Source: Mobula birostris (Eukaryota). Taken from it: 64,000 nucleotides of DNA. The notes beneath the pieces were generated by a model, which made no database searches, was not told the origin of the DNA, and saw only the letters and a program-made list of their open reading frames with translations. Below are positions 471 to 56,169 of the stretch, one piece after another. Positions within the stretch are counted from its first letter, which is position 1. Each line of letters begins with the position of its first letter. The stretch lies in NCBI RefSeq assembly GCF_030028105.1, contig NC_092379.1, positions 45,680,150 through 45,744,149 on the forward strand. Reading direction: 5' to 3'. The position numbers were made by a program, and so were the translations under genes.

Positions 471-2396
471 TGTGTTGTCGGTTGGCAATGGTTGGAGCCA
501 TAAATTGCCCCAAAGGAAATGATGAAAATCATTGTACAGGCGCAATAACATCATCGTATTAGATTCTCAGGGCAGGTTTTAAATACCCTTTCGGAATTTC
601 ATGAATGTTAACTTCTTCCCGTGATAATGGCAGATGGTTGCTTATGTATGCATATTGCTCAACTCAAATCACAACTCCTTATCAAATGAAGCTGTCCACG
701 TATTGCTGCGGAAAGATCTATGTGGCAAGTGGAAGTGAAATTGCTATGACATTAGTTCCAGACAATATTTAAAAGAAACTGTAACAACCTGCGCTAGATA
801 TTCAATGCATTACGTAAAAGAACATGCTGACAACTACGAACCCCAACATTCTTCAGTCTCCGACTATTTATAGAATACACTATCGTTCTATTCATTTGTC
901 CTAAGTTAGTACCCTCACGTTTTCCACCAATTAGCTAAGTATTAGCAAATTATTTTCTTGTCCATATCCCACCAAATTTTCCAGGAATCCTTCTCAGAGA
1001 TCTCAGCTTGTTTTCCCAGCAAATATACATATTACAGTATATCCAACCGTAATATCATGGAAATAGATTAAGAGCAGCTGAGGCCCCAGTACCGGTCGCT
1101 GCTTTTACGACCGTAAACCCTTATTTCATTCGCTTCTGGTAAATGGTTGCTGTAAGGTTTAACATGTACAAAATAGACTGCTTTTATTCACCTGAGCTAC
1201 TCAGACAGTACTTCCCAAACACAAGATATCGTTATGACCAGGGGCGTCAAATACACGGGTAGTTTTCTTCTTCCATGCACACCACATCCTGACTTGGAAA
1301 TGCCGTATAGCGCCTTCACTTCAGTTTCGATGGGTTACATCCTGTACTACTCAAAATGAGTGCACATCACGCTACACCAGAAGCATTAAAATAGTTCAAG
1401 AAAGTAGCTCACATTCTCAAGGCTAAGCATGCCTGACAGGTAAATCATGAACTTGCCAGCTGCATCGAAACGACATTAAAATATTAAAACAAAAATACTA
1501 AAGGCCTGTACACATTTGAAAGTGAATTATTCTGCCAAATTTTTTACTGTATTTTAATAGCTCTGTTTAATTCTGTTTCTGGAATGCGTTGGGAAATAAA
1601 TATTGCAGTTGTCGGTTCATACATTGCAGTAGACTTCTGTAATTTTCAGGATCAATTATGCGGCAAGAGATCGCTGCGAATACATGGTTCTATTATATTT
1701 TGTGACACGTGGTAGCCTACAGAGACAGTGTTTCACTTTACTGCCAAGTTTTCCTATTTCTAGTGGAGTCGTTCCAACAAAATATGATGGAAGGTATTGA
1801 GGACATAGCAGTCAGTCCTGGGTTCATAAATTGTTGGTTGTATTGAATGCTAACCACACAGCAGCGCTCTCGTTAGAATTCCTTATTTTGAACAGCATTC
1901 TACTCCGTTCGTAATGGGAAAAAACAGTCAAACTTGGTAGTTTTTACTGAGTATAGCTCTACGCTTATTTACCCTATTCAGTCAATTTGTTTCGACATCA
2001 CAATAGAAACCGGAAGACGAACTTTTTGCCTATTTTGTGCGAATCCTTTCCAATGCAGTCACGTTCAGGCCAATGAGCCACGTTTTCCCTCAGTATTCTG
2101 TTGATCTGATGGTGAACGTTTGCATTCCCGAATGTAGTCAGGGTTAAATTCGTGTTAATGTAATCTTTGCGCTATGTTATAAATAAACGGGAGGATCATT
2201 TAGGATATCATCTAAAGAAATCAGAGGAATCAAGCTGATAAGGCAGGAAGAACGGTATTAGCGAAGCAAAAGAAAAAAAAAAACACTGAGAAATGCAGAG
2301 TGTGGGATTATGAGCGACTGTGACCTGATTACAGTTGTAATAATCCACATCTTTAATATCATAAAATGAAAATAACCATTCCCACTTTTTTGCCAG

Positions 2397-2717
2397 AAGA
2401 TTGTCATGAGGCTGATATTAATGTCATCATAAAAAAGCCTTCATTTGAAGAGATTTGGACGCTTCAGAGAGCGACAATTATATGCGAAGTGGTTTACGCA
2501 GATTTACAGAATGTCACAGTCTCTTGGCGAGTAAATGGAAGTCGGAGAATCAACGGAGTAAAGACACACGGTCCAGAGTGGAGGGGAAGTAAATCCGTCA
2601 TCGTCACCAAACTGAAGGTCAGTTTAGAGGAGTGGAACAGTGGAACCGAATACCTGTGCTTCGTAGAAGACCGTGATCTGCCAACACCGCTGACAATCGC
2701 CACCAAAAAAACTAAGG
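2397..2717 (+). CDS. IgW: Ig heavy-chain constant exon, penultimate C1-set domain (IgW long-form CH5-like; homologous to IgNAR C4)
   Basis: Acceptor ttttttgccag ends at 2396 and the donor is G|GTAAGT at 2717/2718. The exon is phase 1-1 and 321 nt. Translation DCHEADINVIIKKPSFEEIWTLQRATIICEVVYADLQNVTVSWRVNGSRR...WNSGTEYLCFVEDRDLPTP has the canonical C1-set Cys-Trp-Cys. The PxFEEIW..ATIxCE and GSKSxIVxKLKV motifs match shark IgW/IgNAR as I recall them. The isotype call is from memory, not from a search. Confidence 0.9.
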
Positions 2718-2881
2718 GTAAGTGCAATTAAGCGCCGTGTTGAGGCCACAGAGTGCATTAGATAAACTGTTGGACAGTGACATTCATGAATAGTAAATAA
2801 AATCTCCTCTAATCTGGAGTATTACGGAGTAATCTGCAAATCATAGACGAAACTAATTGAACATATATTTTTCTATTCCAG

Positions 2882-3264
2882 TTACTGAAGTGCACCGTCC
2901 GAAAGTCTACCTCTTGTACCCATCAGCTGAGGAGATTCAAGCCGAGGAAGCAGCTACCCTAATTTGCCTTGCGACCGGTTTTTATCCGGAAGATATATAC
3001 GTCGGCTGGATGGCCAATGACACTCTTTTACCTTCCGGTAACTCCATCCAATTTAACAGCAATGAAGAAAAGGGCTCCAACTCGGTTACTAGCAAACTGA
3101 GGATCAGCGCAGAAGATTGGGAGAAGGGAACCACCTATCGTTGTTTGGTTGGACATCCGTCGTTACCAACACATTTAGTCAGAAGTATTAGTAAATCCCA
3201 TGGTAAACCTACTTTAGTTAACGTGTCACTCGTACTAACTGACAGCTTTAAATTGTGCGACTAA
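2882..3264 (+). CDS. IgW: Ig heavy-chain last constant exon plus secretory tailpiece (IgW long-form CH6-sec-like)
   Basis: Acceptor tttttctattccag ends at 2881, phase 1, after a 164-nt intron. Translation PKVYLLYPS..ATLICLATGFYPEDIYVGWMANDTLL..YRCLVGHPSL is a C1-set domain. The tail GKPTLVNVSLVLTDSFKLCD* has the NVS glycosylation site and penultimate Cys typical of secretory tailpieces. An internal donor G|GTAAAC at 3202/3203 would serve the membrane form. Confidence 0.92.
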
Positions 3265-7557: not shown

Positions 7558-7718
7558 AAATCGGTGAAATTCCGGAAGACCTGGATGACTATTCAGACGG
7601 TGGAGGAGAAGTATTCGTAAACTTAGATGAAGAGGTTTGTTCTCCTTCAACGCTTCTCGTCTTTGTGATCCTCTTTATGATGAGTATGATGTACAGCGCA
7701 TTTACAACGACTATTAAG
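7558..7718 (+). CDS. IgW: Ig heavy-chain transmembrane exon TM1 (acidic spacer plus CART-like helix)
   Basis: Acceptor atttcgatttcag ends at 7557 (phase 1, compatible with the 3202 donor) and the donor is AAG|GTAATA at 7718/7719 (phase 0). Translation EIGEIPEDLDDYSDGGGEVFVNLDEEVCSPSTLLVFVILFMMSMMYSAFTTTIK aligns with the mIg TM pattern F..LF..S..YS...T..K. Confidence 0.88.
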
Positions 7719-8096: not shown

Positions 8097-8108
8097 ACGC
8101 GTGCGCGC

Positions 8109-8157
<49 letters not shown>

Positions 8158-8203
8158 CGCGCATCTATCTTTGTTGGTTTAAGTGAGTGAGAGAGAGAGA
8201 GAG
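8097..8203. repeat. Compound (GC)/(GT)n and (GA)n microsatellite
   Basis: Directly visible dinucleotide runs. Confidence 0.95.
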
Positions 8204-10800: not shown

Positions 10801-10819
10801 TGACTTAATAGAAGTATCG

Positions 10820-11530
10820 CACACAAAATGATGGAAGAACATGTCAGGCAGCATCTATGCAAAGGAATCCATATTTCGGGCCGAGACCCTTCATCAAAGT
10901 TGTAAAGGAAGGGGAAAGAAACCAGAATAAGATTAGCGGAGGGGAAGATTTACAAGTTAGAAGGTGATAGGTGAAGTTAGGTTATGAGGAAGGTAGATAG
11001 CTGGAGGAGGGAGTACGAAGTGAGAATCAGGGAAGTAATAGGTGGAAAAGGTAAAGGACTAAAGAAAAAACGAATTGCAAACATAGCTTGGAGAGCAGAG
11101 TGGCCCATAGGAAAAAGGCAGGAAGAGGAAGTCGGAAAAAATACTGGGTTAGAGAAATCGATGTTTATGCTGCCATTTTGGAGGCTACTCCGATGAAATT
11201 TGAGGTTCCTGTCCTCCAACCTGAGAGTGGCGTCATCTTGACGGTAAAAGAGGCTATGAACGAACGTCGGAATGGGAATGGGGATCAGAAGTGAAATGGT
11301 TGGCCACGATTTTCTGTTTGTTTTTTTTGTGGACAGACGGTAGGTGCTCGTCAAAGCGATCTCCCAATTTACTTTGTAAAGACAGCTGCAGTGTGAGCAC
11401 GGGATACAATAGATGACTCCAGCAGTCTCGCGGGTGAACTGTTGCCTCACCTAGAGGACTGTATAGGGCCGTGAAAGGTGGTGTGGAGGGACATTTCGGA
11501 CGAGACCCTTCAGCGGTCTGAAGAAAACAG
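10820..11530 (-). mobile_element. Penelope-like element fragments with GIY-YIG endonuclease remnant
   Basis: Minus-strand FTRETAGVIYCIPCSHCSCLY, KLGDRFDEHLPSV, VANHFTSDPHSHSD and ATLRLEDRNLKF..SLQNGSINIDFSN, followed by a pyrimidine-rich pLTR with degenerate hammerhead motifs (about 10871-10900 and 11490-11520). Confidence 0.8.
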
Positions 11531-11779
11531 ATTGCGAATAGATTTAAAAGGCGGAGGAGGGGAGAGAGAAGCACAAAGTGATAGGGCAAACCGGGAGGGT
11601 GCCAGAATGAGGATTAGTGGGGAGTGACGAATGGAAAAAGGAATCTCGGAATTATAGAGTGTATAAAATGTTAAGAGGCATGGATGAAGTGTATAGCCAA
11701 ACGCCGTTTTCCAAGTGGCATTGGTTAATAGGAGAGGATATATTTTTAAAAAGACTGGAGGAAGGAATATGGAGAATGT

Positions 11780-12400
11780 CAGAAGTAAGCTAGGCATCAT
11801 CTATGGAAAAAAGTACCGTGGACGTTTCGGGCCAAGACCCTTCGGAGGACTGTAGAAAAAAAAGGAGTAGATTTAAAAGGGTTGGGGGGAGAGGGGAGGG
11901 AAGAAGACAAGGTGACGGGTGAAACTGGGAGGTGAAGAGCTGGGAAGTTGATTGGTGAAAGGTCTGGAAAAGAACATCGAGCAGGAATATCGATTTCTCG
12001 AAATCTTGGTAATGCAAACCTCCTTCCCCACTCCCCATCCCTTTCCCCCTCTCTCACCTTATCTCCTCGCCTGCCCACGGCCTCCTTCTGATGCTCCTCC
12101 CCGTCTTCTTTCTTCCATGGCCTTCTGTCCTCTCCTATTAGACTCCGCACTTCCCCAACTCTGTATATTTTTCTCCAGTGAACTTCCCAGCTCTTTATCT
12201 TGTCTCTCCCTCCCGGTTTCACTTATCACCTTGTGCTTCTCCCTCCCCTCCCCCACCTTTTAAATCTACTCTTCATCTCTTTTCTCCAGATCTGATGAAG
12301 GGACTTGGCCCGAAACGTCGACCGTGCTTTTTTCCCCCTATAGATGCCGCCTGGGCTGCTGTGTTGCTTTGATTTCCAGCAGCTGCAGATTCTCTCTTGT
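11780..12400. mobile_element. Penelope-like pLTR pair in inverted arrangement
   Basis: A minus-strand pLTR (about 11800-11960) is joined to a plus-strand pLTR (about 11990-12400). Both carry the GGGTCT(C/T)GGCCCGAAACGTC-type motif or a close variant. Confidence 0.75.
12288..12324 (+). ncRNA. Minimal type I hammerhead ribozyme motif (core intact, helix I degenerate)
   Basis: CTGATGA at 12292-12298, GGG/CCC helix II, GAAAC at 12312-12316 and GTC cleavage triplet at 12317-12319. Helix I pairs poorly (AGAT vs GACC). Confidence 0.55.
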
Positions 12401-13769
12401 TTCAGATTGGAGAATGTCAGACCAAGGAGTGGTCAGTCTGTGCAACGCGCTGCCATAGTGTGGTGGTAGATGCAAGTACATCCGGGATATTTAAGAGACT
12501 TTAAGATAGACAGATGTAAGAAAAGTGCAGCGCTATGCTGGAGGGCATCGTTATATTGATTTTAGAGTAGATTTAAAAGTCGATAGAGCAATGTGAGTCA
12601 AAGGACCTGCATTGTGCAGTACTTTTCTATGCTCTGTTCTCTATATTCAGAAGAAGGGCGGCGAACCTATACTCAAGGTACACACACATATTAATCCTCG
12701 CAGTATATTGCTACAAGTCATCCAAAGTTGTGCGTAGGTTACTGCGGCTTTGTCTCACCTTGCAATATTGACACCAGGATAAGCATTGCTGTTTGCATAT
12801 GACGTTCTTTGAAAGGAGAGGAGACTATCAATACCACTACGTTTTAATCTAGCTTACAGCCTGATCATGGCTGTCACTTAGCAAGTAAAGGATGTTCTTG
12901 ATCCACTTTGGGAAAGTCGGAAACTATGGGCAGCTCTTTGAACGGGAGTTTCTAATACACTCATTTACCTGGCGGATGAAACCATCATCACATTGAACAA
13001 TATATCCTTCAACATCTCATAGTTTATCCTGATGAAAGGTATTACCATGACAACTCAGATGAAACTTTAGGAGCGTCTTTTCGAGGAACAGATGGCACAG
13101 CCTTTGTTTCAGTTTGCTCGCCACCTCCATCAACGGGCTTTCCTGTGCTACGAACTACATTATTGCTGCTTCTTGCCTTCACATAGAACTACATTATTGC
13201 TGCTTCTTGCGTTCGCATCATTTTGCTCTGGTCTTCACGTGGGTCTAATTATGACCTTTGCTTTTTGAACCTATTCGTCTCTATTTCAATAGATAAGTAA
13301 ACCGGATCTTTAGCTTCAATTTTACAACCGCCCCTGTCAATGATTCATGCCTCACTATTTCTATTGAAGCCAAAAAAATTCCAGACCAATACATATTCTT
13401 CCTTTGCATCATGTCTTCTGCGCCCCTATACACCGCAATTGCTTCTCCGAAACCACTATAACATTTCCTCATGCTACTAGAGAACGCAAGTCCTTTCATC
13501 CCGATATCAACGGACCCACACAATTCAGATACAGTAGAGTTTCAGTCTAATTCAGACTTCTAATCTAGTGCAATATATTTGACGTTCACGATATGGCCTC
13601 CTCTACAATGGAGACACCACCTGAAATTGGATGATTACTTTGCAAAAATCTGCTTTTCATCCTCATAAGTGATGTGGGACGTCCATTTATCTCTCTATTT
13701 AATGCTACATCCAGGTCTCACTATTGGAAAATCTCTGCATGGACCTTAGTGAAACCTTTGAAAACGATC

Positions 13770-14760
13770 TCCAAAGTAAACTGGAAAACTAGATCTATCA
13801 TTGGCTTGGAGATAGGAGTCAAAACCTAATGAATTTCTGATTGGAAAGCTCTGGAGTGGTGCATCGCAGTGGTCACCTCTGGAACTACTGCTGACTGTAA
13901 CATTTATTAATGACCTGAATTTGACGTAGAATATGTTATTTGTAAGTTTGCCCAAAATGTTTATCAACGGATACAGTAGGATATCCGTAGGCGAGCTGAC
14001 CAGAACGTTGGTCATCTGTCAAGTTAGTCCAGTGACAGATGAAGGGAAGTATTTTGGAAAGTGAAATACTCTAAGATTAGAGCATATGAGGGTCAGATTA
14101 GGGCACTACGAAATTTTGATGAACAGAGACACACTGGAGTATAAATCAATTGTTCTCTGTAGGCGGAATCACAAGAGGATGTGGCAGTAACGAAAGGATG
14201 TGGCAGTTTTCTTCAATGGACTAGTAATAGATTAAAGAAGTTCGAGCTACATGTTTCCAATTTTTAAAAAAAGACTCACCGGACCGGGATTGGATTATTC
14301 TACGCAGTACTGGTCACCATACTATGATAATCACTCGATCGCGCTGGACAGAATGTAAAAGACATTTTTCGATTTGTCCATTCCTTGACCGGAGTTTATT
14401 AGAAGAAATTTGGTAGGCTTGGTTTATTCTTCCTGGAGCGAAGGAGACCAAGGGCTGGCTTCAAAGATATATAATCAGATGAAATATAATAAGTATGGTT
14501 GGGGTAGTTAGTTAGAATGTTTGTCATGTTCTGCTGTATGGAAGAAGAGGATGGACATTAAACGTGGAAACGAAGACAATTCCAGAGGAAGTGGTAGAGG
14601 CACATTAAACAACAACTTTCAGTAAACATCTGGCCAATCACTTGAATAGACAAGATGTCGCATGCCGTGAAACTAATGCGATTAATGTTGGATACGTATA
14701 GGTGGGTCTTTTAGGACAAAGTGGACGGTACAGCCTGTTTCTGTGCATTAGAACTCGACC
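13770..14760 (+). mobile_element. Old decayed CR1 RT/3' fragment
   Basis: Remnants of SGVPQ.S.LGP and FINDLD, and downstream LEYCVQFWSPHY-like DNA, with many stops. Confidence 0.6.
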
Positions 14761-15939
14761 TTTAATTTCATAACTTTCCTTCCTTCATTTTCTGTTCGTG
14801 TTGTCTGGATGTAAACACGATATTATTCCACACTGTCAGAGAAAGTACACTTATTCCACCTTTTCCACTCTATCATCTTCTCTCGTGCCTGGACTGTCAA
14901 ATTATCCAGCTTTATGTGACTCGCACGTTATTTCTTTTTGCATCAGAACTGATCATTTCTATCAGTAATCCATCTGTGATTTCGTTCAAATTTTCTCTCT
15001 CCATTAGTACAGCCTAGCCTGCTGGGGACGTTCCACGGCCCTGCTATTTGCAACACTCATGGCAAGTTGGCACAATCGGTTGCTGGCTGTCAGGTTAACC
15101 AATTCGTCACCATCTACAGAAATGGCTTTGGAGTCAAAACGTTAGCTTTTTCGCGGTATGCGTCGCTAGATGTACCCTGCTCAGTGCGCCCTACATTTCG
15201 TCATTTTTAATCTAATAATTTTAATTTTACATGAAAGATTCTATAACATTCAATTATTTCATTTTCCATAGTGATATAGGTGGTATTAGGTTTCATTATT
15301 GTCATTATTTATGTTTTCCAATTTGTACTGCAATATAGATTCCCATCATTGTAGTAGCCAGTCATGTTGATACTGTGAGTCTTAACATAGACCCCACAGT
15401 TCATCCAATTGTACGCAAGGTAGCTGGAGCATACTTCATGTTCACTGTGATGTTGGTATTCAGTTCCATTATTTCTAAAGGGAAGTTATTATCTAAACCC
15501 CGGAACCTGGTTCATGAAATTTAACTCAGCCTTCGAGCTGCACCGCCCTGTAACACGTGGGCAAATCACACGATAATTTACAATGACCAATTAATCTACG
15601 AAATGAATTGCGGATGGAATTGACCAATCTGCCAACCGAACTGCAGGTGGAAACCTGAGCACGCGGAGAAAACCCATGCAGTCACTGAGGAGAATGTAAA
15701 AAAATCTTTACAGGACGGCCCCAGAAATTAAATCTGTGCGCTAGTACTCCAAACCATTTTTCTAACCACTACGCCTTTGTAAATTACATTTTGAAACATT
15801 CACCAGAAGGCTCAGAAACGGAAACAGCCAAATACTTCAGGAGGGAAAAAAAGCAGGAGCAGACAAGATAGAAAAAGGGGTAGACTAATCAGACCCCCGA
15901 AATGTCATTCATTGATATCACAGGTGACCTCATTATCAG

Positions 15940-18900
15940 TTAGAAACATCGATATTTTGAAAACATACAGCACAATACAGGCCCTCCGACCCACAAAGCT
16001 GCGCCAAACATGTTATTACCTTAGAAGTTACCTAGGGTTACCCATAGCCCTCTATTCTTCCTGAGCTCCATGTACCTGTCCAGGAGACTCTTAAAAGACC
16101 CTATCGTATCCACCTCCACCGTCGTCGCCGGCAGCCCATTCCACGCACACACTACTCACTGCATAAAAAAAAACTTATCCCTGACATCTCCTCTGTACCT
16201 ACTTCCAAGCACCTTAAAACTGTGCCCTCTCGTTCTTGCCACTTCAGCCCTGGGAAAAAGTCTATGACTATCCACACGGTCAATGCTTCTCATCATCTTA
16301 TACGCCCCTATCAGGTCACTTCTCAGCCTCCATCGCTCCAAGGAAAATAGACCGAGTTCGCTCAACCTATTCTCATAAGGCATGCTCCCCAATCCAGGCA
16401 ACATCCTTGTAAATCTCCTCTGCACCCTTTATATGGTGTCCACGTCCTTCCTGTAGTGAGGCGACCAGAACTGAGCACAATACTCCAAGTGTTGTGTCCT
16501 ATATAACTGCAACATTACCTCTCGGCTCCTAATGTCAATCCCACGATTGACGAAGGCCAATGCACCGTATGCTTTCTTAACCACGGAATCAACCTGCGTA
16601 GTAGATTTGAGTGTTCTATGGACTAGAACCCCAAGATCCCTCAGATCCTCCACACTGCCAAGAGTCTTGCCATTAATGCTATATTCTGCCATCATATTTG
16701 ATCTACCAAAATGAACCACTTCACACTTACCTGGTTGAACTACATCTGCCACGTCTCAGCCTAGTTTTGCAACATATCAATGTCTCACTGTAACCTCTGA
16801 CAGCCCTCCACACTATCGACAACACCCCCAACCTTTCTATCATCACCCAATTCACTAACGACTTCCTCACCGAGGTCTTTTATAAAAATCACGAAGAGGA
16901 GGAGTCCCAGAAGAAATCCCTGAGACACACCACTGGTCACCGACCTCCATGCAGAATATGACCCGACTACAACCACTCTTTGCCCTCTGTGGGCGAGCCA
17001 GTTCTGGATCCGCAAAGCAATGCCTCATTGGACACCATGCCCCCTTACTTTCTCAATAAGCCTTGCGTGGCGTACCTTATCAAATGCCTTGCTGAAATCC
17101 ATATACACTACATCTACTGCTCTACCTTCATCAACGTGTTTAATCACATCCTCAAAAAATTCAATCAGGCTGGTAAGGCACGACCTGCCTTTTACAAAGC
17201 CATGCTGACTATTTGGAATCATATCATACCTCTGCAAATGTTCATGAATCCTGCCTCTCAGGATCTTCTCCATCTACTTACCAAACACTGAAGTAAGACT
17301 CACTGTTGTATAACTTCCTGGGCTATCTCCACTCCCTTTCTTGAATAATGGAACAACATCCGCAACGCTCCAATCCTCCAGAGCCTCTCCCGCCCCAATT
17401 GATGATGCAATGATCATCGTCAGAGTCTCTGCAATCTCCTCCCTAGCCTCCCACAGTAGCCCGGGGTACATATCGTCTGGTCCCACTGACTTATCCAACT
17501 TGATGCTTTCCAAAAGCTCCAGCACATCCTCTTTCTTAATATCTACATGATCAAGCTTTTCAGTCCGCTGTAAGTCATCCTGACAATTTCCAAGACCCTT
17601 TTCCGCAGTGAACTCTGAAACAATGTACTGATTAAGTAGCTCTGCCATCTCCTCCGGTTCCATACACATTTTTGCACTGTCACACTTGATTGGTCCTATT
17701 CTCTCAAGTCTTATCGTCTTGCTCTTCACATACTTGTAGCATGCTTTTGGGTTTTCCTTAATCCTGTCCGCCAAGGCCTTCTGAAGGCCGCTTCTGGCTC
17801 TCCTAATTTCTTTCTTAAGCTCCTTCCTGCCAGCCTTATAACCTGCTAGATCTCTATCGTTACTTAGTTTTCCGAACCTTTTGTAAACTCCACTTTTCTT
17901 CTTGAATATATATACAACAGCCTTTGCACACCACGGTTTCTGTACCCTATCATCCTTTCTCTGTCTCATTGGAACGCACTAACGTAGAACTCAACGCAAA
18001 TATCCCCTGAACATTTGCCACATTCCTTCCGTACATTTCTCTGAGAACATCTGTTCCCAATTTATCCTTCCAAGTTCCTGCCTCATATTTCCCCATACTC
18101 CAATTAAACGCTTTCCTAACTTGTCTGTTCTTATCGCTCTCCAATGCTATGGTAAAGGAGATAAAATTGTGATCACCATCTCCGAAATGCTCTCCCACTG
18201 AGAGATGTGACACCTGACCAGGTTCATTTCCCGATACCAGATCAAGTACATTCTCTCCTCTTGTAGACTTATCTACATATTGTGTCAAGAAACCTTCCTG
18301 AACACGCTTAACAAGCTCAACCCCATCTAAACCCCTCGCTCTAGGGACATGTCAATCGATGCTTGGAAAATTAGAATCTCCCACAACGATAACCCTCTTA
18401 TTATTATCCTTTCCAGAATCTGTCTCACTATCTGCTCCTCGATGACCCTGTTACTATTGGGTGGTCTATAAGAAGCACCCAGCACAGATATTGACACCTT
18501 CCTGTTCCTAATTTCATCCCACAGAGACTCCATAGACAATTGGCCCATGTCTTCCTCCTTTTCTGCAGAAGTGAGACTATCTCTGATCAACAGTGTCACA
18601 CCCCCACCTGTTTTGCCTCCCTCCCTGTCCTTTCAGAAACATCTAAAGCCTGACACTCGAAATAACTATTCCTGCCCCTGAGCCATCCAAGTTTCTGTAA
18701 TGGCCACAACATCATAGCTCCAAGTACCGATCCACGCTCTAAGCTCATCCGCTTTGTCCATAATACTCCTTGCATTAAAATAAACACATCTCAAATCATC
18801 GGACCGAGCGTGTCCCTTCTCTATCACCTGTCTATACTCCCTATCGCACTGCCTCCAAACTCTCTCTATTTCTGAGCCAACCGCCTCTCCCTCCATCCCA

Positions 18901-19215
18901 CACCCCAGCAATCCTCTCCGCAATAGCTTTAGCAAACCTCCCCACCAGAATATTGATCCCCGGGGATTCAAGTGCAACCCATCCTTCTTGTACAGGTCAA
19001 AAGAGGCACCAGTGATCCAGAAATCTGAATCCCTGCCCCTACTCCAATCCCTCAGCCATGCATTTGTTTTCCACCTCACCCGATTCTTATACTCACTGTC
19101 CTGTGCCACAGGCAGTATTCTCGAGATTCCTACTTTTGTTGTCATACTTCTCAACTTCCTGCCTATTCTTCCTGTCTGTATTCTACACAGGCAACCTACC
19201 TCACCTCGACCCGGC
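15940..19215 (-). mobile_element. CR1 LINE, 5'-truncated within ORF1, frameshifted ORF2
   Basis: Broken ORFs cover the esterase end (DLYKKDGLHLNPRG), APE endonuclease (CVYFNARSIMDKADELRAWIGTWSYDVVAITETW), RT (QHGFVKGRSCLTSLIEFFE, VYMDFSKAFDKV) and C-terminus (RTRGHSFKV). Confidence 0.9.
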
Positions 19216-20464
19216 CTTCCTAATCACTCGGCGCAACTATATTGATAACGATGCAATATTTTATGTTCTGTAAGACGACCTTAAAAGTTTGTATGGGTTC
19301 ACGATTTAAAGGTTTTATTACACTTTGAGAGACGAAATTCGTCCTCATCACGGTCTTTACTTCATTGCTGTTTCTTCTGAAACTATATTTCTTCGCTGCA
19401 GATCATTCTGCACATGTTGGAAATCCAGTGCAACGCACAATAAATCCTCAACGAACTCAGCACGTCAGGTAGAATTTATGGAGAGGAATGAAGAGTCGCC
19501 GTTTAGGCCGGCAACTACTTATTCCTCTCCACAGATACTACCTAATCTGCTGAGTTCCACCATCATATTCTTTCTATTTCTCTTAGTTCTACGTCACTCA
19601 TACGCGGAAACTTTCACAATATTGATCATTACCATTCACAATGCGATATTTTTTTGTTTCAAAGCATCAGCATATATGATTCTATTATGTGTAATTGCAA
19701 TTTTTTCAATTCTCACTCCTGAGGCAAGCTATTCATATTAACGAATAAACTACTGAACCTTTACCATAGTGCCCTCAATGCAAATGTCTGATATTAAACA
19801 GACTAAAAATATCGGTATAATTCCAAGAATGCCCTTAGCCGCACGTTGTACTTTTCGACTTCCACTTATTGTGCAATAAAGGTGGACGAGCCAAAATACA
19901 CCCTGATTATTTGCAACCGTGCTCGGCAACATTTTCACTTTTACGTCCAGAGACTATGACCAACAACACAACAGTTCAGACCAGGGCAAAGAAGAATTTA
20001 TTCTTTGTGCTTAACGTGGATGGTGCTTCCTGTTCGCCAAAATAATATGTAAAACTACGCACAGTGTATTTTAGAATATCCGCTCACTGTAACGGGTTAA
20101 GAAAATACGTCAGGTCAGACTTAGTCCGAAATTACACCACGCATGAGGTATCAGATCAAGTAGAAAGCTGCAAAATACATCAACTCCTTCATATTTGACA
20201 TATGAGGGATCAGATGTGGGTTGAAAATAAACCAGTCGACCAATCATTTCCCTGTATAATTCCGACTTATAAGTACCCTTAATGGAGGGTACAGAAATAT
20301 AACATGGGGATGCAGCCTGGAGCTGATAATGAATCTAACAATTTACAAGGAAAATATTAGAACATTTTATTCTGTTACTGTACTGTTTCGACCATTCGGT
20401 CGCTTTGAATGTTTGCCTCTCTCAGCTGCTCACTGGATTCTCTGTTCGTGTTCTATCGTTACAG

Positions 20465-20473
20465 GTGAATTAG
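20465..20473 (+). CDS. IgW: Ig heavy-chain TM2 exon coding part (VN*), cytoplasmic tail KVN
   Basis: Pyrimidine-rich acceptor ttctatcgttacag then GTG AAT TAG, in phase 0 matching the TM1 donor. This mirrors the V-K-stop TM2 exon of other IgH genes. It is the first such match I found downstream of TM1 (intron 7719-20464, 12.7 kb). Confidence 0.72.
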   Translation: MN

Positions 20474-20544
20474 AGAATGCTAAAACAGACGCAGCTCCAG
20501 CTTTTGTTTTAATGGACCCGAAGTTAAGTGATGACGTATGGTGA

Positions 20545-20680
20545 CCATCCTGATGAAGCTTCTCAGCCTGGAGCGTCGATTGTTAGTCTGCTCCATAGAT
20601 ACTGCCTGACCTGCTGAGTTCCTCCAACTTTTAGTGCGTTGTTCTGGATTTCCACTATTTGCAGAATCTCTAGTGTACAG
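20545..20680 (+). mobile_element. Penelope-like pLTR 3' fragment inside the predicted TM 3' UTR
   Basis: CCTGATGAAGCTTCTCAGCCTGGAGCGTCGA (dead hammerhead, GAAA changed to GGAG) followed by the family tail GCCTGACCTGCTGAGTTCCTCC...TTTCCA...TGCAGAATCTC. Confidence 0.7.
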
Positions 20681-20691
20681 TACATGATATC

Positions 20692-20697
20692 AATAAA
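20692..20697 (+). promoter_or_regulatory. Candidate poly(A) signal for the membrane transcript
   Basis: AATAAA about 220 nt after the TM2 stop, with T/G-rich sequence downstream. Confidence 0.45.
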
Positions 20698-23454
20698 CCA
20701 CTATTCTCTGCGTCAATTGCGATGTTGTGCTTGTGAAATTGCAGTTTTGTTTCCCTTTCTTCCATCGGTTTGATTCTGATTTTTTCTTGTGAAACACTTG
20801 TTTTGCTTAGAATTTCACAGAAATGTTGCAAAGCGTATTCCTCTGAATAATGTAACATAAACTGGGATTAAAACATTGTCGAATAGTGAGAGATTTGAAG
20901 TCTACCACAAATGTGAAAAAAAAATTCAATACGCCTTGCAATCTGCCATTCTAATTTTGTACTTGAACGAAACAGTTAATTTAATTTGACTTCATGAGCG
21001 TCGCCCTCTCCTACTACCCATACTCACTGACAAAGCAATAAGTTGTTTAGGAATGAGTCTTCGTATTTCACTCCGTTGACTGAGTTCCAAAAGAAGGTTT
21101 GATACTCAAGGCTGCGCACGAAGAAAGTGTAGCTGAATTAAACAAACTATATGTCTCTGTGTCCGGCAGCTTAACCAGTTGCCTTGCTTTAAAAAGTCGG
21201 GGTGGGGGACCATGATCATTATTAGCAAACTACGTGGAACTATTATAAAGAAATTGCGCGAATACACAATCTTAACTATTTGCATTTGAAAAAAAACATT
21301 ATCCCATTTAAGAGTTTCTTTCAGGTAGAATTTTACAACTGAAATATATTGATTACCATTATGTTTATGCTGAGTGATACTCTGCCACGACAGTAGGTAT
21401 TCTAGGAGATTGTGCCTCTGCAGTTCCTATCAGTGAGCATGGAAAATGGGAGAATCATGTCATGCTGCTCGGCTGAAAACAAAGGCTACAATCCTCCTTG
21501 TTGACCTTCCACTATAGTTGGGAATCACCGAGTCCTGCTGTTCACTGAGGGCAGAAAGTTGCTTTACCGGAACTCGGAAGCTGCATGACTGCTCACATTC
21601 GAAGAACAACGGAGCTCTAAATGTATGCATTACTCGGTTCTTGACATACATTGGTAGCCAACGCTGATTTGCAAATTTCCTGCATTTATTTTTGCAAATT
21701 TAACGGAAGTGTGACAGCCTGCAGATTGTTCAATTGCCCGTGAAAGGAGACACTGCGCGGGCCCTTGCAGTGTAGCAATAAGATCACTTGATGGAGAACG
21801 CATACTCTCGCCAGAGTAACCGGAGAAAATCCAATTCCTTTACGTCAGGATCTAAACCTTTCATGCTTGCAGAAAGCCGGAAAAAGCCAAAATCTGATTT
21901 TTCTGGCATGAAGTCAGAATGGGTTGGATCACTCAAATTCCTAACATCACGGGGAAATTACATAACCTCCTCAGAAGATTTTATGCTTATCGCCGTGTTG
22001 CCCGATACTGTTTGTTTACTTATTTGTGAGACACTACTGTTAGAACAAAGAGAATGCAATATAATGCTCATTGACTTCTTTATTACTGCTGGGAATTCTG
22101 GTCTAAATTGCACATGCTTACGCGTTCTGTTAAATATTGTATTTTTTTTTTACCATGTTCTATTGACTATTGATAAAACTGAACCACATTGCCAATTAAA
22201 CCTACATGTTGAGTAACGAAAATAAGGAAGATTTAACTCAGACAAGCAACGTAATTTGAGGCTAAAGATAAATCAGATAATCTTTTGGAAAATTTGCCGT
22301 GTTGCAAATCAAAATGGAAATTATTAAAATGTGTAATTAATTTAAAATATAACCAATACAAAATTATTTAAATTATTCTACGTTAGTGGTGTAACGTTAA
22401 TAATTTTAATTAATTTGTTCACTTAACTTTCCAAACAAATGTTTTAAATTATTTCAAGAACAACTAAGTCAAATTTAAGCATACTTAAATTAAAGTGTAC
22501 GAGTAGCAGCTGGGAAATGAATAATGTAGATATATATTGCTGAAGGCGACGCGCTTCGTAATACTGTATACTACTTGATATGTGAAGACTTTCGTCAAAA
22601 TGGTTGTTCTTTCATTGAAACGATTATCAAATAGTGTCGTATAATTGCTGTTAAAACTTTTTAACATGTGCGAATGAACTGACGTTTAAAAAGTTCGTGT
22701 TGTGGTCCATAGGTTTGCTCACAACAAGAAACATTGGAACTTAGATCACAAAGCCTTGCTGGTTTTCTGCGGGGCAGATCCCACCTCTTGAGCATGACTC
22801 AGTGTTTAGAGAATGTGACTAAACAAATTAATGAAGATAGGTAGAGTGGTGTACGTGTTTTTAGTTAGCTGTTCGGCAAGGTTACCCATGGCAGGCTTTT
22901 CCACGCAGACGTGAGGGGTGAGATCCATGGAAACTTGGCTGCGTTGACTCGAATTGGCTTTCCGACAGAAGACAGTGCATGGTAAAACATGAAATGTGTT
23001 CTGCCTGAAGATTGGTGACGAGTGGTGTTCTGCAAGGATTGTTCTGTGACCCCACTCCTCCTATTTTTTTTTCTGATTTTTATCATTGACATAGAGGAGG
23101 AAGAGGAAGGGTGAGTTAGTAAGTTAGCAGATGATTCTGACAAGGAAATGGAAGGCTTGGACAGTAAGTTTGCAGATGGCACGAACACTGGTGGTTTGTA
23201 TGCTGTAAAACGTTGTTGTAGCTTACAAAGAGCTGGATGGGAAAATGGCCGCTTAACACTGCGCCGTACTTAAAGCGAATAGGTTTTAATAACGTCTGTT
23301 GTGTGTGTTTGTGTCCATAAAAATCAGTGATATTTGGCGAGAAATAAGCAGAAAAACAATTCTGAACTCTGTTGCTCACTAAGGTTTCAAGCATTCATGC
23401 CTGGAGATGCCAATAAACGACCAGGAGCGAAAAGAAAACCACTTGACATCTTCA

Positions 23455-23947
23455 AGAGACGAGAAAATCTGCAAGTACTGTAAATCCAAGCAACATACAC
23501 AAAATACTGGAGGAACTCAACAGTCCAGGAAACATCTATGGAAAAGATTAAACAGTCGACGTTTCAGGCCAAAACCCTTCATCAGGACTGGAAAAAAAGA
23601 TAAAAAGTTCGAGCAAGGAGTTTGGGTGAGGGGAGGAAGACACACAAGGTAGTAGCTGATAGGTGAAAGAAACAAAGGGCTAGAAAAGGGGGAACCTGAT
23701 AGTGGAGGATAAAAGACCATTGAAGAAAGAAAAAGGGGAGGAACATCAGAGGGATGTGATGGGCAAATAAAGAGATGAGGTAATAAAGAGATGAGGTGAG
23801 AGGGGGAATGTGGAATGGGAATTGTGACCGTGCTGGGAAACTACCGGAAGCTCGAGTAATCGATGTTCATTCCAACAGTTTGTCAGAAAAAATCGGGATC
23901 TCCTGGTGACCACCCACTTCAATTCTACTTCCCACTCTCATTCCGAC
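23455..23947 (-). mobile_element. Penelope-like pLTR with inverted junction to a GIY-YIG-region fragment
   Basis: Same pLTR family on the minus strand, switching to a + orientation CCACCCACTTCAATTCTACTTCCCACTCTCATTCCGAC segment just before the LTR insertion. Confidence 0.75.
23553..23590 (-). ncRNA. Intact minimal type I hammerhead ribozyme (Penelope type)
   Basis: Reverse complement CAGTC-CTGATGA-AGGGTTTTGGCCT-GAAAC-GTC-GACTG gives a 5-bp helix I (CAGTC/GACTG), full core, AGG/CCT helix II, palindromic ACGT helix III and a GUC site. Confidence 0.75.
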
Positions 23948-25153
23948 TGTCATAATGGGGTGTCTGGGAACGGACCCAAGTGCAAGACACAGACACTGAA
24001 GTACTAGGGACAGGACGAGGATGCCGGGTGAGGGCTAGGACATCGACTCGAAAACTGGGAACCCGGAACAGGACTGGACAAGAGAGCTAGGAGCTCGGGC
24101 TTGGACTCCGAGCCAGAGACTGGACAAGGACCCAGTACCTGGGTCTTGCCTCTGGCTCGGACCCCAGAACTAGGCAAGGACGTGACTTCGCTAGCAGGCA
24201 GGACGGGGCTGGAGTCTTCAGACTTCAGGCGAGGCTTGAGGCGAGGCTGGAGACCAGAGACTTGAGTCGAGGCTGGAGACCACAGACTTGAGGCGAGGCT
24301 GGAGACCAGTGACTTGAGGCGAGGCTGGAGACCAGTGACTTGAGGCGAGGTGGAGACCAGAGACTTGAGACGAGGCTGGAAATCAGAGACTTCAGGCGAG
24401 GCTAGAGACCAGAGGCTTGAGACTAAAGACTTGAGGCGAGGCTTGAGACTAGAGGCCTGAGGCTTGGGGTCTTGAAGCTTGGCTTGGGGCGAGGCTTGAG
24501 GCTTGGGGTCTCGAAGCTTGGCTTGGGGCGAGGCACGGCTAGGAACTTGAGGCGAGGCTCGGCTAGAGACTTGAAGCGAGGCTTGGCTAGAGGCATGGGG
24601 TCTTGAAGCTCCTCGTGGGCAGGGCACAGTACTCCTGGGCAGGGTGTGGATCACCTGGGCAGGGAGCGGATCTACACCTGACGGAGACAAGGGACAGGAA
24701 GGGACAGAAACAATCGCAGGTTAACGGCAATCTGGCCTGGTTTACCCGACGGAGGCAAGGGACAGGAAGGGATCTAGATACAGAGTGGCTCCAAGAGAAG
24801 ACTTCAGGCGAAGCGAGGCGGGAGTTACCGGCAAGATAAGGCAAGGCTTAAGGCAATGCAAGGCGAGACAAGAACTTCAGGCGAGGCGAGGCGAGAGTTA
24901 TCGGCAAGACAAGGAAAAGATTCAGGCAATGAATCAGAAGGCAGGGGAAGGGATACAAGGAGTGAGGACAAGAACAATCCAGCCACCAGGCGTTGGTCTT
25001 TCGAGGTATTTATGCAGCCAGCCCCAACGAGAATCAGCAGCCTCAATTAGTGCTCAATAGGAACAAAAACAGGGTAGACAGGAAAACCTGGAACAAGGGT
25101 CGATGGATCGGGCCGTAAACCGGAATGCGGAGTTCACGGACTGGACCATGACA
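23948..25153 (-). mobile_element. Solo LTR (about 1.2 kb) with internal tandem repeats
   Basis: TGTCA...TGACA termini with a perfect 5-bp TSD CCGAC (23943-23947 and 25154-25158). It contains arrays of GAGGCGAGGCTGGAGACCAGAGACTT-like units. Strand is inferred from a TATA-like ATAAATA on the minus strand (about 25007-25013). Confidence 0.88.
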
Positions 25154-52340: not shown

Positions 52341-53143
52341 TGCCCTGACAAGCCACTCAAGCACATCATGGTCAGACATTAACAGTTGTTAAGGACCGTT
52401 ATCTAATTTTTTTTTGATTGTTTTTATTTATTTTTAGATGTGGGTTACTAACATGATAGTGTCTTCTTAATGCAGGAGGGAAACACAACCTGGAACGGGG
52501 AGAGGTTAAGATATTTGGAAGTATGCCAACCAGTTGATCCTCACAAGATCTCAGGACAGGGTCAGGGACAATACCAGGAAGACTGATCTTACATTCATCT
52601 TGATGTCTGTAGGTTCAGGTGCACTGGAGACTGTCAGGGGTGATGGTGATCGATTCGTTCGCTTCTGCTCAAAACATGTATGGAAGGTGATAAGCTCATT
52701 TTCGATTAAGTGTTACCTGAATATGATTGAATGCAAATGATATGAAGAGACAGTACAACTTCAGGTTAACATTGCATCATATGGTACTACATTCAGATAA
52801 AGTGATGAATATACCAGCTCCTTTATATCTGAGATATAATGATCAGATGCTGATTGGAAACGTACAAAGAATATGAGCCCATTAATATTCTTCCCAAAAT
52901 GTTTCTCACACTCACGCAGGAGTTATTGCAGAATACAGCCCTTTCATATTCCTGTATTATTGCTCTTGCATATGTATGTAATGGTTCGACTATTGTGCGT
53001 ACCACAGCAGAAATGTCTGCAACTAAGAAAGAACCCAATGATTTACAAACGAAAATTATGTGTTAATTCATGCTTTTGACCATACCACCTGGTTGTCTCT
53101 TTCCCTCAATCTCTGATTCACAGGTGGTGTTCTGTCATTGCAG

Positions 53144-53152
53144 GTGAACTAG
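53144..53152 (+). other. Paralogous TM2-like exon (GTG AAC TAG = VN*), orphan or alternative last exon
   Basis: GTGTTCTGTCATTGCAG|GTGAACTAG is 22/26 identical to 20448-20473 and sits in a multi-kb paralogous block. Confidence 0.65.
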
Positions 53153-54610
53153 TGGATGCCGAACCAGAAGAAATGTTAAATACTGAAACATCCCCTCTGC
53201 AAATATATAACGACTTTGATTCACTTTCTCCCAACCTTTTGATTCGGCATTGTCAGTTGCTGTTGGGTGGACTTTTACAATAACAGTGACAGCAAAATAT
53301 GTCCTTTATAATAAGAAATGGTGAGGGGAAATTTTCGTGGGACATATTGGAAACTGATTCTATTGTGAAAGAATTCAATTATCCTTTGAGTAGAGCATTG
53401 TAATTTCGCACTCTGAAAGAAAGCCCATGTTTAAAAGACTGCCTCTCTTAATATGCAAAGTAATATATTAATATGAACAAGTAATCGTTAGGAAATACTA
53501 GACATCGAGTTTTAATGTGTTCCTCCGTTAGCTGGTTTTATTTTTGCATCTGTAATTACATATCAAAATAGAGTTTGATACGCGAAGGTAATTTCAGGAA
53601 TTTTTAGTTTTCCTGGAAAGTAACCACATGATCCCATTTAAGTCCTTCTCTGGGGTAGTATTTAAGAAACGAATATATTAATTGTTCCTTTTGTTTGTTC
53701 TTATCAGCAATTTGTGAGTGTTGGTGTTATTGACACTTCCCAAAACTTCTCTCGCACTCACGCACAAGGTATTACAGAATCGCATCATTTCTATAAACGA
53801 CCTCGAGTAACACATCCCAGCTGCGACTTCCGTTCTCCAGTTGAGAACATTTTTTCTACATGAGACCTAAATGCTTCGCTGAATTATGAAGAAGTTGGTC
53901 AATGTATAATAAGTTGTATTTTAAAGTAATTCCAATGTGAAATATATGCTGAGAATTGTAGAATAAATAGATAAGATTCAAGTGTGCCGTGGTAGAGCAT
54001 AAGCAGTTGAGGGCAAAAGATTAGCAACGGATATATTGTGTTGATATCACAACACGTTACGTTACAGTGTGTTCTCTATGAAAACTGTTATCAGGATTTT
54101 ACTGAGGCTTTCAATGGAAATAGTCCCACCCTGCTTCTCGACCGTCCTAGACTCAAAAGCTTCAAGCTTTTTCCGGATATTGATAACAGTCGGAATCACA
54201 TGATGGGCATAGGTTGTCATGTTCCCAGTGGCCGATAAAAGGCATTACCGTGACTCCAGAATTACATGGCAACACACATTGTAATGAAAATCTAGCAGAA
54301 AATACATGCCTTTCTCTACTCTTTGTTCACACTTTCAATTTCCAGAATTACTTAGTGACTGGAAAAAAAACACATCCTGCAGATGTGTTTGGTGGAGAGC
54401 ACATCCCGTCAGTGCAGTAACATGATTCATCCATGTAAGTCCGAATCAAAGGCTTAAATCTCCGAAAGAAATCAGAAGAAGCTGCATCAGAACCTGAATG
54501 ACGCAAATTCCTGTGATTACCATCAGGTTGTTGTTCTCCTTCAATTTCACCTGTGAAGCCTGAGTTTTGCGCAATCATAACATTGCAAATTAATTGAAGC
54601 TATGAAGTTT

Positions 54611-54933
54611 CGTTGAAGTGTTGAAGTGTTGGCGCCTGGCCAAATGGTTAAGGCATTCGTCTAGTGATTTGAAGGTCGCTAGTTCGAGCCTTGGCTGAGG
54701 CAGCGTGTGTGTCCTTGAGCAAGGCACTTAACCACACATTGCTCTGCGACAACACTGGTGCCAAGCTGTATGGGTCCTAATGCCCTTCCCTTGAACAACA
54801 TCAGTGGAGAGGGGAGACTTGCAGCATGGGCAACTGCTGGTCTTCCGTACAACCTTGCCCAGGCCTGCGCCCTGGAAACTTTCCAAGGTGCAAATCCATG
54901 GTCTCATGAGACTAACAGATGCCTATAAATATA
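54611..54933 (+). mobile_element. tRNA-derived SINE with CORE-like central motif
   Basis: A-box-like TGGCCAAATGGTTAAGG, B-box-like GTTCGAGCC, central GTGTCCTTGAGCAAGGCACTTAACC, and a 9-bp TSD ATGAAGTTT (54602-54610 and 54934-54942). Confidence 0.8.
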
Positions 54934-56169
54934 ATGAAGTTTTGTTACTGCTATATTGACATGTCAAGTATAATTAAGTCATGGGCAATTACATTTGGAT
55001 CACGTCTATTTCTACATCAGTTATATTTCATCACCTTAATTTCATATATACTGATATCTTTTGCCGTCAAGGCGGAACTTACTTAGTTGATTCTTCCGAG
55101 GGCCTAAAGTCATGGGAATAACAAAGGCTTTCTTCAACAGATTATATCCTGTCAGTGATCTGAATAATAACATTTTCCTTACTTGTAGTAAATTCCTGCT
55201 AGAATGTCAACAAAGAGAATGCAATAAAATTGTTCAATGCAGATTGATTTTTAACCGAAAATTCTGGTTTAAGACTAATGCACCTCCGCATGCATTTAAA
55301 CTTTGATTGATATTAGTCAAACTTTCCACAATAATAATTAAAGCTGTAAGGTGTATATTTTTTTTTTAAAGCAAGGTGACGATTTAATTCATTCATGCAA
55401 CAGTGAAACTAAGATCCTAAAGACTAAGGATCAATCGAATTATCTTGCATCTTGCCAACGATTGGGTCTGCTGCTGAAGTAACCAAAAGTATTACATCGT
55501 TGAAATAAATTTGAATGATGATTATTACAAAAGGATTGCTGCTGCTGTGTCTTCGCAACAAAGTTAATCACTTTCATTAATGTATTCATACTTTACTAAC
55601 AAAGAAATCTAATCGGTAACTGTCCTCACAGATATTGCAACACAAATGCACGAAATAAAATTAATTTTATTTTCATCAAAGTGAAAGGGCAGCGTTGTGA
55701 GCTAAATTGTGTAAATTACTGATAATGTCGCGCTTCATAATTTAGAATCTTGTTGAGATAAAGACATCAGTTTATTTACCTTGCGAGTTAGACTTGTGGA
55801 GTTCAAATAAAAGCATTCCACTCCTCTAGTCATTTTCTCTGCCTGCTGGATGCTCTCACATGTAAATCTATCCAAATCTTTGAAATCACTCCAAAATTCA
55901 AATGTTCGAAGTACATTTATTATTAAACAATGTATACATTCTACAGCCTTGAGACTCGTCACCTGAGAGGCAGCCACGAAACAAAGAAAGGCAAAAAAGA
56001 AGACCGTCAAACACCCAATGCATCACTACGTTCGGATATGGCCTAACTGCGGAGCGAGACACTGAAGCAGGTCGATAGTTCACAGACTTTAATGCGAACA
56101 GAGTTTGCGGGAAAAGAAAATAATAAACGCTGGGCCAATCAGGGCCATTAACTAAAACTCTGAAATAGA

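What the first reader, a model, noticed from the sequence alone, without database searches (positions are those of the whole stretch)
19770..22300. Ancient direct duplication of the IgH membrane 3' end: TM2, 3' UTR and flank recur about 33 kb downstream as an orphan
Seen: colinear matching blocks between about 19770-22300 and about 52720-55450. These include AATGCAAATG..ATAT..AGAC (19777/52730), CA(A/G)CTCCTT(C/T)ATAT..GATCAGATG (20181/52815), the acceptor plus VN* (22/26; 20448/53127), TTTGATTC and TGTGAAA..AATTCAAT in the UTR, ACAT(T/G)ATCCCATTTAAG (21296/53626) and CAAAGAGAATGCAATA (16/16; 22046/55211). Each copy has its own later insertions (PLE at 20545, SINE at 54611). I found no Ig-domain exon or clear TM1 between 22.3 and 52.7 kb. 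The AG acceptor and the VN-stop are both preserved, with only a synonymous AAT/AAC change in the coding part. Inference: either a relic of a deleted IgW cluster, or a second alternative last exon giving the same membrane protein a different 3' UTR.
Basis: partly seen in the sequence, partly recalled or inferred. Interest (0 to 1): 0.8.

Follow-up and report, generated by a model that had tools for sequence, protein, structure and literature searches.

The report
Dead duplicate of IgNAR membrane-exon end
About 33 kb downstream of a ray antibody (IgNAR) gene lies an old, decayed second copy of its last tiny membrane exon and the DNA around it. RNA data show only the first copy is used, so the second is an ordinary gene-duplication relic and not a second working gene end.

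Summary
Window 20142-22581 (copy A) and 52778-55759 (copy B) are colinear homologues in the same orientation. Eight to nine chained blocks give 1,144 aligned nt at 69.6% identity (K2P 0.39). The chain score is 201, against 28±19 (max 75) for 100 other window segments, 59 for reverse-complemented B and 24±16 for shuffles. Each copy carries its own later repeat insertion.

- The gene is IgNAR, not IgW or a generic IgH. Its exon at 2366-2728 matches nurse-shark 'Novel antigen receptor' at E 2.4e-39.
- The first listed block (octamer, 19777/52730) is not part of the significant chain.
- Most of the 'UTR' is downstream flank. A's only canonical AATAAA is at 20692.

RNA contigs from four runs contain the TM1(7718)→TM2-A(20465) junction at depth 65-668. 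They give zero depth over all unique sequence of copy B. DNA runs of the same animal and of related species do hold B.

B's AG and Val-Asn-stop are intact, but that block (76% identity) is barely more conserved than the other blocks (61-75%). B also lacks A's poly(A) signal. No C-domain or TM1 remnant lies between 22 and 64 kb.

Verdict: a non-functional relic of an old segmental duplication. An earlier scan note on other DNA of this genome reports a similar 'ghost second IgW 3' end'; I did not check it.

The parts
2366..2731 (+). IgNAR constant-domain exon, probably C4. This is context: it is part of the gene that owns copy A.
   Evidence: About 68% identical over 101 aa to PDB 2MKL 'Novel antigen receptor', E 2.4e-39. 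Pfam C1-set.
2857..3264 (+). Last IgNAR constant-domain exon with secretory tailpiece.
   Evidence: ORF. Pfam C1-set E 5.7e-19. Matches tailpiece-bearing mu/alpha C-terminal domains.
7558..7718 (+). TM1 exon (acidic linker plus transmembrane helix), with donor AAG|gtaata.
   Evidence: Sequence. Its last 30 nt are the loose end joined to 20465 in the RNA contigs of all four runs.
20142..22581 (+). Copy A of the duplicated segment. It holds the last ~320 nt of the TM1-TM2 intron, TM2, a short 3' UTR and about 1.9 kb of downstream flank.
   Evidence: Colinear HSP chain.
20465..20473 (+). The functional TM2 exon coding part, GTG AAT TAG (Val-Asn-stop).
   Evidence: Spliced RNA contigs covering 20463-20620 at depth 65-668, with TM1 sequence upstream.
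20546..20680 (.). High-copy repeat inserted in A's 3' UTR after the duplication. It is absent from B.
   Evidence: Other copies at 23459-23587 and 49232-49317. RNA-contig depth above 16,000. Rfam gave no match.
20692..20697 (+). AATAAA, the probable poly(A) signal of the membrane mRNA. This is inferred.
   Evidence: It is the first canonical signal after TM2. RNA depth falls to 0 beyond 20640. It has no counterpart in B.
52778..55759 (+). Copy B, the orphan paralogue of copy A.
   Evidence: Colinear HSP chain. Held by DNA runs of the same sample and of other species, but by no RNA run.
53144..53152 (+). TM2-like pseudo-exon, GTG AAC TAG, behind ttgcag.
   Evidence: Sequence. Zero RNA depth over 51900-54600 in four runs.
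54617..54929 (+). SINE-like insertion specific to copy B, flanked by the direct repeat ATGAAGTTT(C/T)GTT.
   Evidence: Sequence. RNA-contig depth 11,000-62,000. ARAGORN finds no intact tRNA.

Best explanation
Copy B (52778-55759) is a non-functional relic. An old segmental duplication copied the 3' end of an IgNAR-type heavy-chain unit: the end of the TM1-TM2 intron, the 9-nt TM2 coding part, the short UTR and about 2 kb of flank. Only copy A stayed in use; the membrane IgNAR mRNA is made by splicing TM1 (donor 7718) to 20465. Copy B drifted at roughly the same rate everywhere, lost the poly(A) signal, and was pushed about 33 kb away by retroelement insertions. Its intact AG plus Val-Asn-stop is survival by chance of an 11-nt target.

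Shown here: the homology, use of A in RNA, silence of B in the available RNA, absence of partner exons, and presence of B in the DNA of related species.

Inferred: the neutrality of B, its age (about 15 times the divergence from the nearest other species in the index), and the mode of origin. Duplication of the 3' end alone and a whole cluster later deleted cannot be told apart here.
For: - Homology: chain score 201 against controls of at most 75.
- Divergence: 1,144 aligned nt, 69.6% identity, K2P 0.39. The acceptor/TM2 block is 76% identical, against 61-75% for the other eight blocks.
- One exact 16-mer is about what 70% identity over 1.1 kb predicts (expected about 1.1 runs; my arithmetic).
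- RNA use of A: contigs 20463-20620 at depth 253, 668, 164 and 65 in X1-X4 carry the TM1 end as loose letters.
- RNA silence of B: depth 0 over 51900-54600 in the same runs. Only the SINE and a LINE are covered.
- RNA runs X2, X4 and X20 hold 0.00 of B's words. DNA runs of the same sample (S4) hold 0.75-0.88, and DNA runs of other organisms hold 0.43, 0.15 and 0.04-0.06.
- B has no AATAAA or ATTAAA until 53962, about 820 nt downstream. A has one about 220 nt downstream, and it aligns to a gap in B.
- No C-domain or TM1 remnant was found in 22-64 kb.
- Earlier scan notes, unverified, describe other truncated IgNAR clusters nearby (s1-145200).
Against: - The RNA evidence comes from assembled contigs of four (plus one) runs from one study. 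Such contigs drop rare isoforms, and the tissues are unknown to me. Use of B at under about 1% of A, or in another tissue or life stage, is not excluded.
- B's acceptor and stop are intact, and that block is the best conserved of the nine, though only slightly.
- B is retained in related species, which is expected for neutral DNA at those distances but is also compatible with constraint.
- Genome-wide copy number of the block could not be measured.
Confidence: 0.8

Rival explanations
1. Copy B is a working alternative last exon. TM1 can splice to 53144 and give the same Val-Asn C-terminus with a different 3' UTR, in a tissue, stage or condition not sampled.
For: An intact AG acceptor and GTG AAC TAG, with only a synonymous change. 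B is present in the DNA of related species.
Against: Zero RNA-contig depth on B where A has 65-668, and 0.00 of B's words in RNA runs. There is no canonical poly(A) signal for about 820 nt. The polypyrimidine tract is weaker, and a competing AG lies 19 nt upstream of the acceptor (sequence). Conservation of the exon block is not clearly above that of the flanks. The intron would be about 45 kb, running across a stronger, used TM2.
Confidence: 0.05
2. The two copies persist because the flanks hold cis-regulatory DNA, for example a 3' enhancer or insulator of the IgNAR cluster. The blocks would be conserved for that reason and not for the exon.
For: The homology extends about 2 kb beyond the poly(A) site of A, and several 75-85-nt blocks reach 72-76% identity. 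Octamer-like motifs lie nearby.
Against: Identity is uniformly low, and the longest exact run is what chance predicts. Octamer frequency is at chance. There is no functional or cross-species test.
Confidence: 0.07
3. The block is an old dispersed repeat, or the match is chance, and it has nothing to do with the Ig gene.
For: The window is rich in LINE, SINE and other repeats. About 30% of the spacer has another copy inside the window.
Against: The chain score is far above every control. Only two copies exist in 64 kb, in the same orientation. The match runs colinearly through a functional exon, its intron end and its flank. True repeats here show RNA-contig depth above 10^4, while the block shows 0 to a few hundred.
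Confidence: 0.03

Closest known systems
Truncated or orphan immunoglobulin gene remnants from birth-and-death evolution of Ig clusters (for example truncated constant-region pseudogenes in mammalian IGH, or pseudo-clusters in cartilaginous fish). This is from general knowledge.
   Same: A paralogous fragment of an Ig gene lies next to a functional copy. It is diverged, unexpressed, and lacks the other exons.
   Different: Here the remnant is only the 9-nt TM2 exon with its noncoding surroundings. Its reading frame and acceptor happen to be intact. It belongs to an IgNAR unit in a ray.
Canonical two-exon membrane end (TM1/TM2) of vertebrate heavy chains, where TM2 encodes only Val-Lys-stop in IgM. 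This is from general knowledge.
   Same: Copy A behaves exactly like this. TM1 ends in ...Thr-Ile-Lys and splices in phase 0 to a two-codon TM2 followed by a stop.
   Different: The residues are Val-Asn, not Val-Lys. The intron is 12.7 kb and repeat-filled. Copy B has the same coding letters but no RNA support.
'Ghost second IgW 3' end' noted by this scan about 26 Mb away in the same genome (s1-145788, unverified).
   Same: A second, decayed 3' end lies downstream of an Ig heavy-chain cluster, with a mutated poly(A) signal.
   Different: That note reports the TM2 exon itself as removed, whereas here it is intact. I could not compare the sequences, so a common origin is untested.

Membership tests
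Functional Ig heavy-chain TM2 terminal exon | AG acceptor in phase 0, followed by a 2-3 codon ORF and a stop | tested here: met
   B reads ttgcag|GTG AAC TAG at 53144-53152.
Functional Ig heavy-chain TM2 terminal exon | Spliced to TM1 in mRNA | tested here: not met
   A has a junction contig with a TM1 loose end at depth 65-668. B has depth 0 in the same four runs and 0.00 of its words in the RNA runs listed. Contig data cannot exclude rare use.
Functional Ig heavy-chain TM2 terminal exon | Poly(A) signal within a few hundred nt downstream | tested here: not met
   The first AATAAA or ATTAAA in B is at 53962. A's AATAAA at 20692 aligns to a gap in B.
Functional Ig heavy-chain TM2 terminal exon | Exon and splice site conserved above the neutral flank | tested here: inconclusive
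   76% identity for the exon block against 61-75% for the other blocks. For the 11 nt of AG plus three codons, 10 of 11 matches has P of about 0.11 at 70% identity (plus arithmetic). No orthologue alignment was possible.
Relic (pseudo-exon) of a segmental duplication | Colinear homology to a functional copy that includes noncoding flanks | tested here: met
Relic (pseudo-exon) of a segmental duplication | Not transcribed, and essential partners or signals lost | tested here: met
   (silent). (no TM1 or C exons). (no poly(A) signal).
Dispersed repeat / transposable element | Many copies, at non-Ig loci | not testable with these tools
   Only two copies exist in the window, and the block has no high-depth signal in RNA contigs, unlike the true repeats. 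A genome-wide count was not possible.
IgNAR heavy-chain gene (owner of copy A) | Constant domains orthologous to shark IgNAR C domains | tested here: met
   Exon 2366-2728 against 2MKL 'Novel antigen receptor': E 2.4e-39, about 68% identity. Its paralogous domain 4Q9B gives E 1e-18. The V-D-J-C1-C3 part lies outside the window (note s1-145457, not checked).

The most novel reading that the evidence does not exclude
Copy B is kept, not merely left over. Either it is a rarely used alternative terminal exon that gives membrane IgNAR a different 3' UTR in a cell type or life stage not sampled, or it is part of a duplicated 3' regulatory module shared by IgNAR and IgW clusters. The second idea follows the similar 'ghost 3' end' noted at an IgW cluster.
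Probability: 0.07. Interest if true: 0.6.

Novelty: new member of a known kind. Interest (0 to 1): 0.22.

Why it matters
It mainly matters for annotation. The IgNAR membrane mRNA of this ray ends at 20465-~20715, and the look-alike at 53144 should not be annotated as an exon. It also records a partial duplication and decay event in an IgNAR cluster of a batoid, consistent with birth-and-death turnover of these clusters. If a comparable ghost 3' end really sits behind IgW clusters too, comparing them could date when the 3' end was duplicated relative to the IgW/IgNAR split. That is a modest but testable point about cluster evolution.

Tried and rejected
- Default self-BLAST (word 11) found only one A/B HSP. 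Sensitive settings with chaining were needed.
- A MAFFT global alignment of A and B misplaced known anchors and was discarded in favour of anchored block alignments.
- A TM1 peptide (53 aa) searched against 1.84 billion representatives gave 0 hits because it is too short. I therefore could not reach other species' loci through proteins.
- A second homology, 3875-4668 against 50250-51896 (partly inverted, 58-71% identity), was examined as a possible further piece of a relic cluster. Two word-index protein searches, Pfam, and BLASTP against a LINE ORF in the window found nothing. The protein atlas gave a lead to PF09004 (ALKBH8_N) clusters in chordates, score 0.91 with 187 shared features. From memory, that domain rides on fish retroelement ORFs. 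I therefore lean towards a decayed retroelement, but this is not proven.
- The octamer ATGCAAAT at the upstream edges (19778 and 52731) is at chance frequency in the window.
- Rfam at gathering thresholds found nothing in the whole window, and ARAGORN found no tRNA in the SINE. The labels 'PLE' and 'SINE' therefore rest on copy number and the target-site repeat only.
- ORF 52152-52388(-) was the best non-self hit of the C-domain profile (E 0.23). It has no Pfam support and was rejected as chance.
Full report
**What is in the window.** The window begins inside an immunoglobulin heavy-chain gene. The ORF at 2366-2731 is a C1-set domain. It is about 68% identical over 101 residues to the nurse-shark 'Novel antigen receptor' domain of PDB 2MKL (E 2.4e-39) and matches a second IgNAR domain, 4Q9B, at E 1e-18. 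The next exon (2857-3264) is a C1-set domain ending in a secretory tailpiece. An earlier scan note (s1-145457, not checked here) places L-V-D1-D2-D3-J-C1-C2-C3 of an IgNAR cluster just upstream of the window. The gene is therefore IgNAR, not IgW. TM1 is 7558-7718, with acceptor tttcag and donor AAG|gtaata. Other scan notes call the genome giant manta ray; I did not verify that.

**Is the duplication real?** Default self-BLAST shows only one weak A/B hit. With sensitive settings, 19700-22400 against 52650-55550 gives eight colinear same-strand HSPs of 58-73% identity with a chained score of 201.

| Comparison | Chain score |
|---|---|
| A vs B | 201 |
| A vs 100 other window segments of the same length, both strands | mean 28, sd 19, max 75 |
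| A vs reverse complement of B | 59 |
| A vs reversed B | 30 |
| A vs 30 dinucleotide-block shuffles of B | 24±16, max 64 |

A whole-window comparison extends the last block to 22581/55759.

- Block-wise realignment gives 1,144 aligned positions, 69.6% identity, 150 transitions, 198 transversions and K2P 0.39.
The 16-mer CAAAGAGAATGCAATA is unique to 22046 and 55211.
In A it lies inside DNA that is colinear with another repeat copy (19502-19578 and 19957-20071 against 49242-49324 and 49407-49524). The octamer occurs 6 times in the window against 3.7 expected.
- The supported limits are 20142-22581 and 52778-55759.
- Repeats lie at or close to three of the four ends: 19405-20071 upstream of A, a LINE fragment from 22760 downstream of A, and a LINE from about 55930 downstream of B. 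The original unit may therefore have been larger.

**Later insertions.** In A, 20546-20680 is a high-copy repeat. It has other copies in the window and RNA-contig depth above 16,000, and it is absent from B. In B, 54617-54929 is SINE-like. It is flanked by ATGAAGTTT(C/T)GTT on both sides, has depth 11,000-62,000, and is absent from A. Rfam and ARAGORN recognise neither element.

**Which copy is used?** Four runs of the same organism, labelled RNA, hold part of copy A.

- Laid on 19300-23300, each run has a contig covering 20463-20620 at depth 253, 668, 164 and 65. The loose upstream letters of these contigs are the last 30 nt of TM1 (7689-7718), so the junction reads ...ACT ATT AAG|GTG AAT TAG (sequence). 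TM1→TM2(A) is therefore demonstrated.
- Depth drops to zero after the repeat, at about 20640. The only canonical AATAAA is at 20692. This is inferred, because contigs break at the repeat.
- Laid on 51900-56200, the same four runs give depth 0 across 51900-54600, including the acceptor at 53144. Coverage appears only on the SINE and on the LINE beyond 55930. This silent stretch also shows that the signal on A is RNA and not contaminating DNA.
- An index search with 52780-54600 finds DNA runs of the same sample (S4) holding 0.75-0.88 of the words. DNA runs of other organisms hold 0.43, 0.15 and 0.04-0.06. RNA runs X2, X4 and X20 hold 0.00.
- B therefore exists in the animal's DNA and in that of related species, but not in its assembled RNA.

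**Signs of selection on B.** There are none that stand out.

- The acceptor/TM2 block is 76% identical, against 61-75% for the other eight blocks.
- Keeping 10 of the 11 letters of AG plus three codons has a probability of about 0.11 at 70% identity.
- One exact run of 16 is what 1,144 positions at 70% identity predict (about 1.1 expected).
- B lacks a counterpart of A's AATAAA. Its first canonical signal is 820 nt downstream of the acceptor.
- B's polypyrimidine tract is poorer, and it has an extra AG 19 nt upstream of the acceptor (sequence).

**Is anything else of a cluster left near B?** Four searches found no C-domain or TM1 remnant anywhere in 22-64 kb:
- tblastn with both C exons and TM1;
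- a profile of the two C exons against all stop-to-stop ORFs of at least 25 aa;
- phmmer with TM1;
- Pfam on the ORFs just upstream of B.

The same profile finds the two known exons at E below 1e-59, and tblastn finds each exon with the other at 35% identity. V and C1 were not available as queries.

A second homology does exist: 3875-4668 (in the C5-TM1 intron) against 50250-51896, partly inverted. Its conceptual translation resembles the C-terminal part of fish retroelement ORFs as I recall them. The protein atlas points to PF09004-bearing chordate clusters. Pfam, two word-index searches and BLASTP gave nothing. I treat it as a probable decayed retroelement, not as part of the relic, and I flag it as unresolved.

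The spacer between A and B holds LINE ORFs with endonuclease, reverse-transcriptase and GDSL-esterase-type ORF1 domains. About 30% of it has another copy within the window.

**Interpretation.** The simplest account is an old segmental duplication of the 3' end of an IgNAR-type unit. Copy A kept the job, and copy B decayed neutrally and was separated from A by retroelement insertions.

- From the word shares, B differs by about 2-3% from the nearest other species (0.43, or 0.49 after normalising to 0.88, equals (1-d)^31). The A/B distance of 0.39 is therefore roughly 15 times older than that split. This is a rough, inferred figure.
- The data cannot tell whether a whole cluster once lay there, followed by loss of V to TM1, or whether only the 3' end was copied.
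- Unverified notes of this scan describe further IgNAR clusters 135-764 kb downstream, one of them truncated (s1-145200), and a 'ghost second IgW 3' end' elsewhere (s1-145788). Partial copies therefore seem common in this genome.
- Published work places the IgM, IgW and IgNAR clusters of elasmobranchs in one linked region and derives IgNAR from an IgW-type cluster (PMC12227049). That makes such turnover unsurprising.

**Verdict.** The 'alternative last exon' half is not supported by the available RNA. This is an ordinary pseudo-exon relic of low to moderate interest. The residual novel reading, rare regulated use or a conserved regulatory flank, has a probability of about 7%.

Noticed in passing
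window 19560-20492: RNA contigs run unspliced across the TM2 acceptor from about 900 nt of upstream intron. Depth is 108 in X2, 32 in X1 and 17 in X4, which is about 13-26% of the spliced contig's depth in those runs. This could be intron retention, or a transcript starting in the repeat at 19.4-19.6 kb and reading into TM2.
   Followed up: no
window 19467-19559 (and 19715): A cluster of A>G differences between RNA contigs (X2, X4) and the genome lies over a stretch that is an imperfect inverted repeat of itself (19453-19557). This could be A-to-I editing of a hairpin, or contigs from other copies of the repeat.
   Followed up: no
window 3875-4668 and 50250-51896: A pair of homologous stretches (58-71% identity), partly inverted relative to each other. 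One lies just after the secretory exon and the other about 1 kb upstream of copy B. It is probably a decayed retroelement (atlas lead to PF09004), but no sequence search confirmed that.
   Followed up: partly
window 7719-20464: The TM1-TM2 intron is 12.7 kb and largely retroelement DNA: a LINE at about 15.9-19.2 kb plus repeats at 8.9-12.6 kb. It is nevertheless spliced efficiently.
   Followed up: partly
window 32404-32664 and whole window: Rfam at gathering thresholds reports no family anywhere in the window.
   Followed up: partly
window 24004-24690 and 45100-46160: Long ORFs on both strands in low-complexity, Ser/Pro/Gln-rich tandem-like DNA. Only 24004-24687(-) was scanned against Pfam, with no match. 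They look like repeat arrays and not genes.
   Followed up: no
window 21704-22196: Very low RNA-contig coverage (depth 2-5) about 1-1.5 kb downstream of the presumed poly(A) site of copy A. The homologous part of B has none. This could be read-through or an unrelated weak transcript.
   Followed up: no
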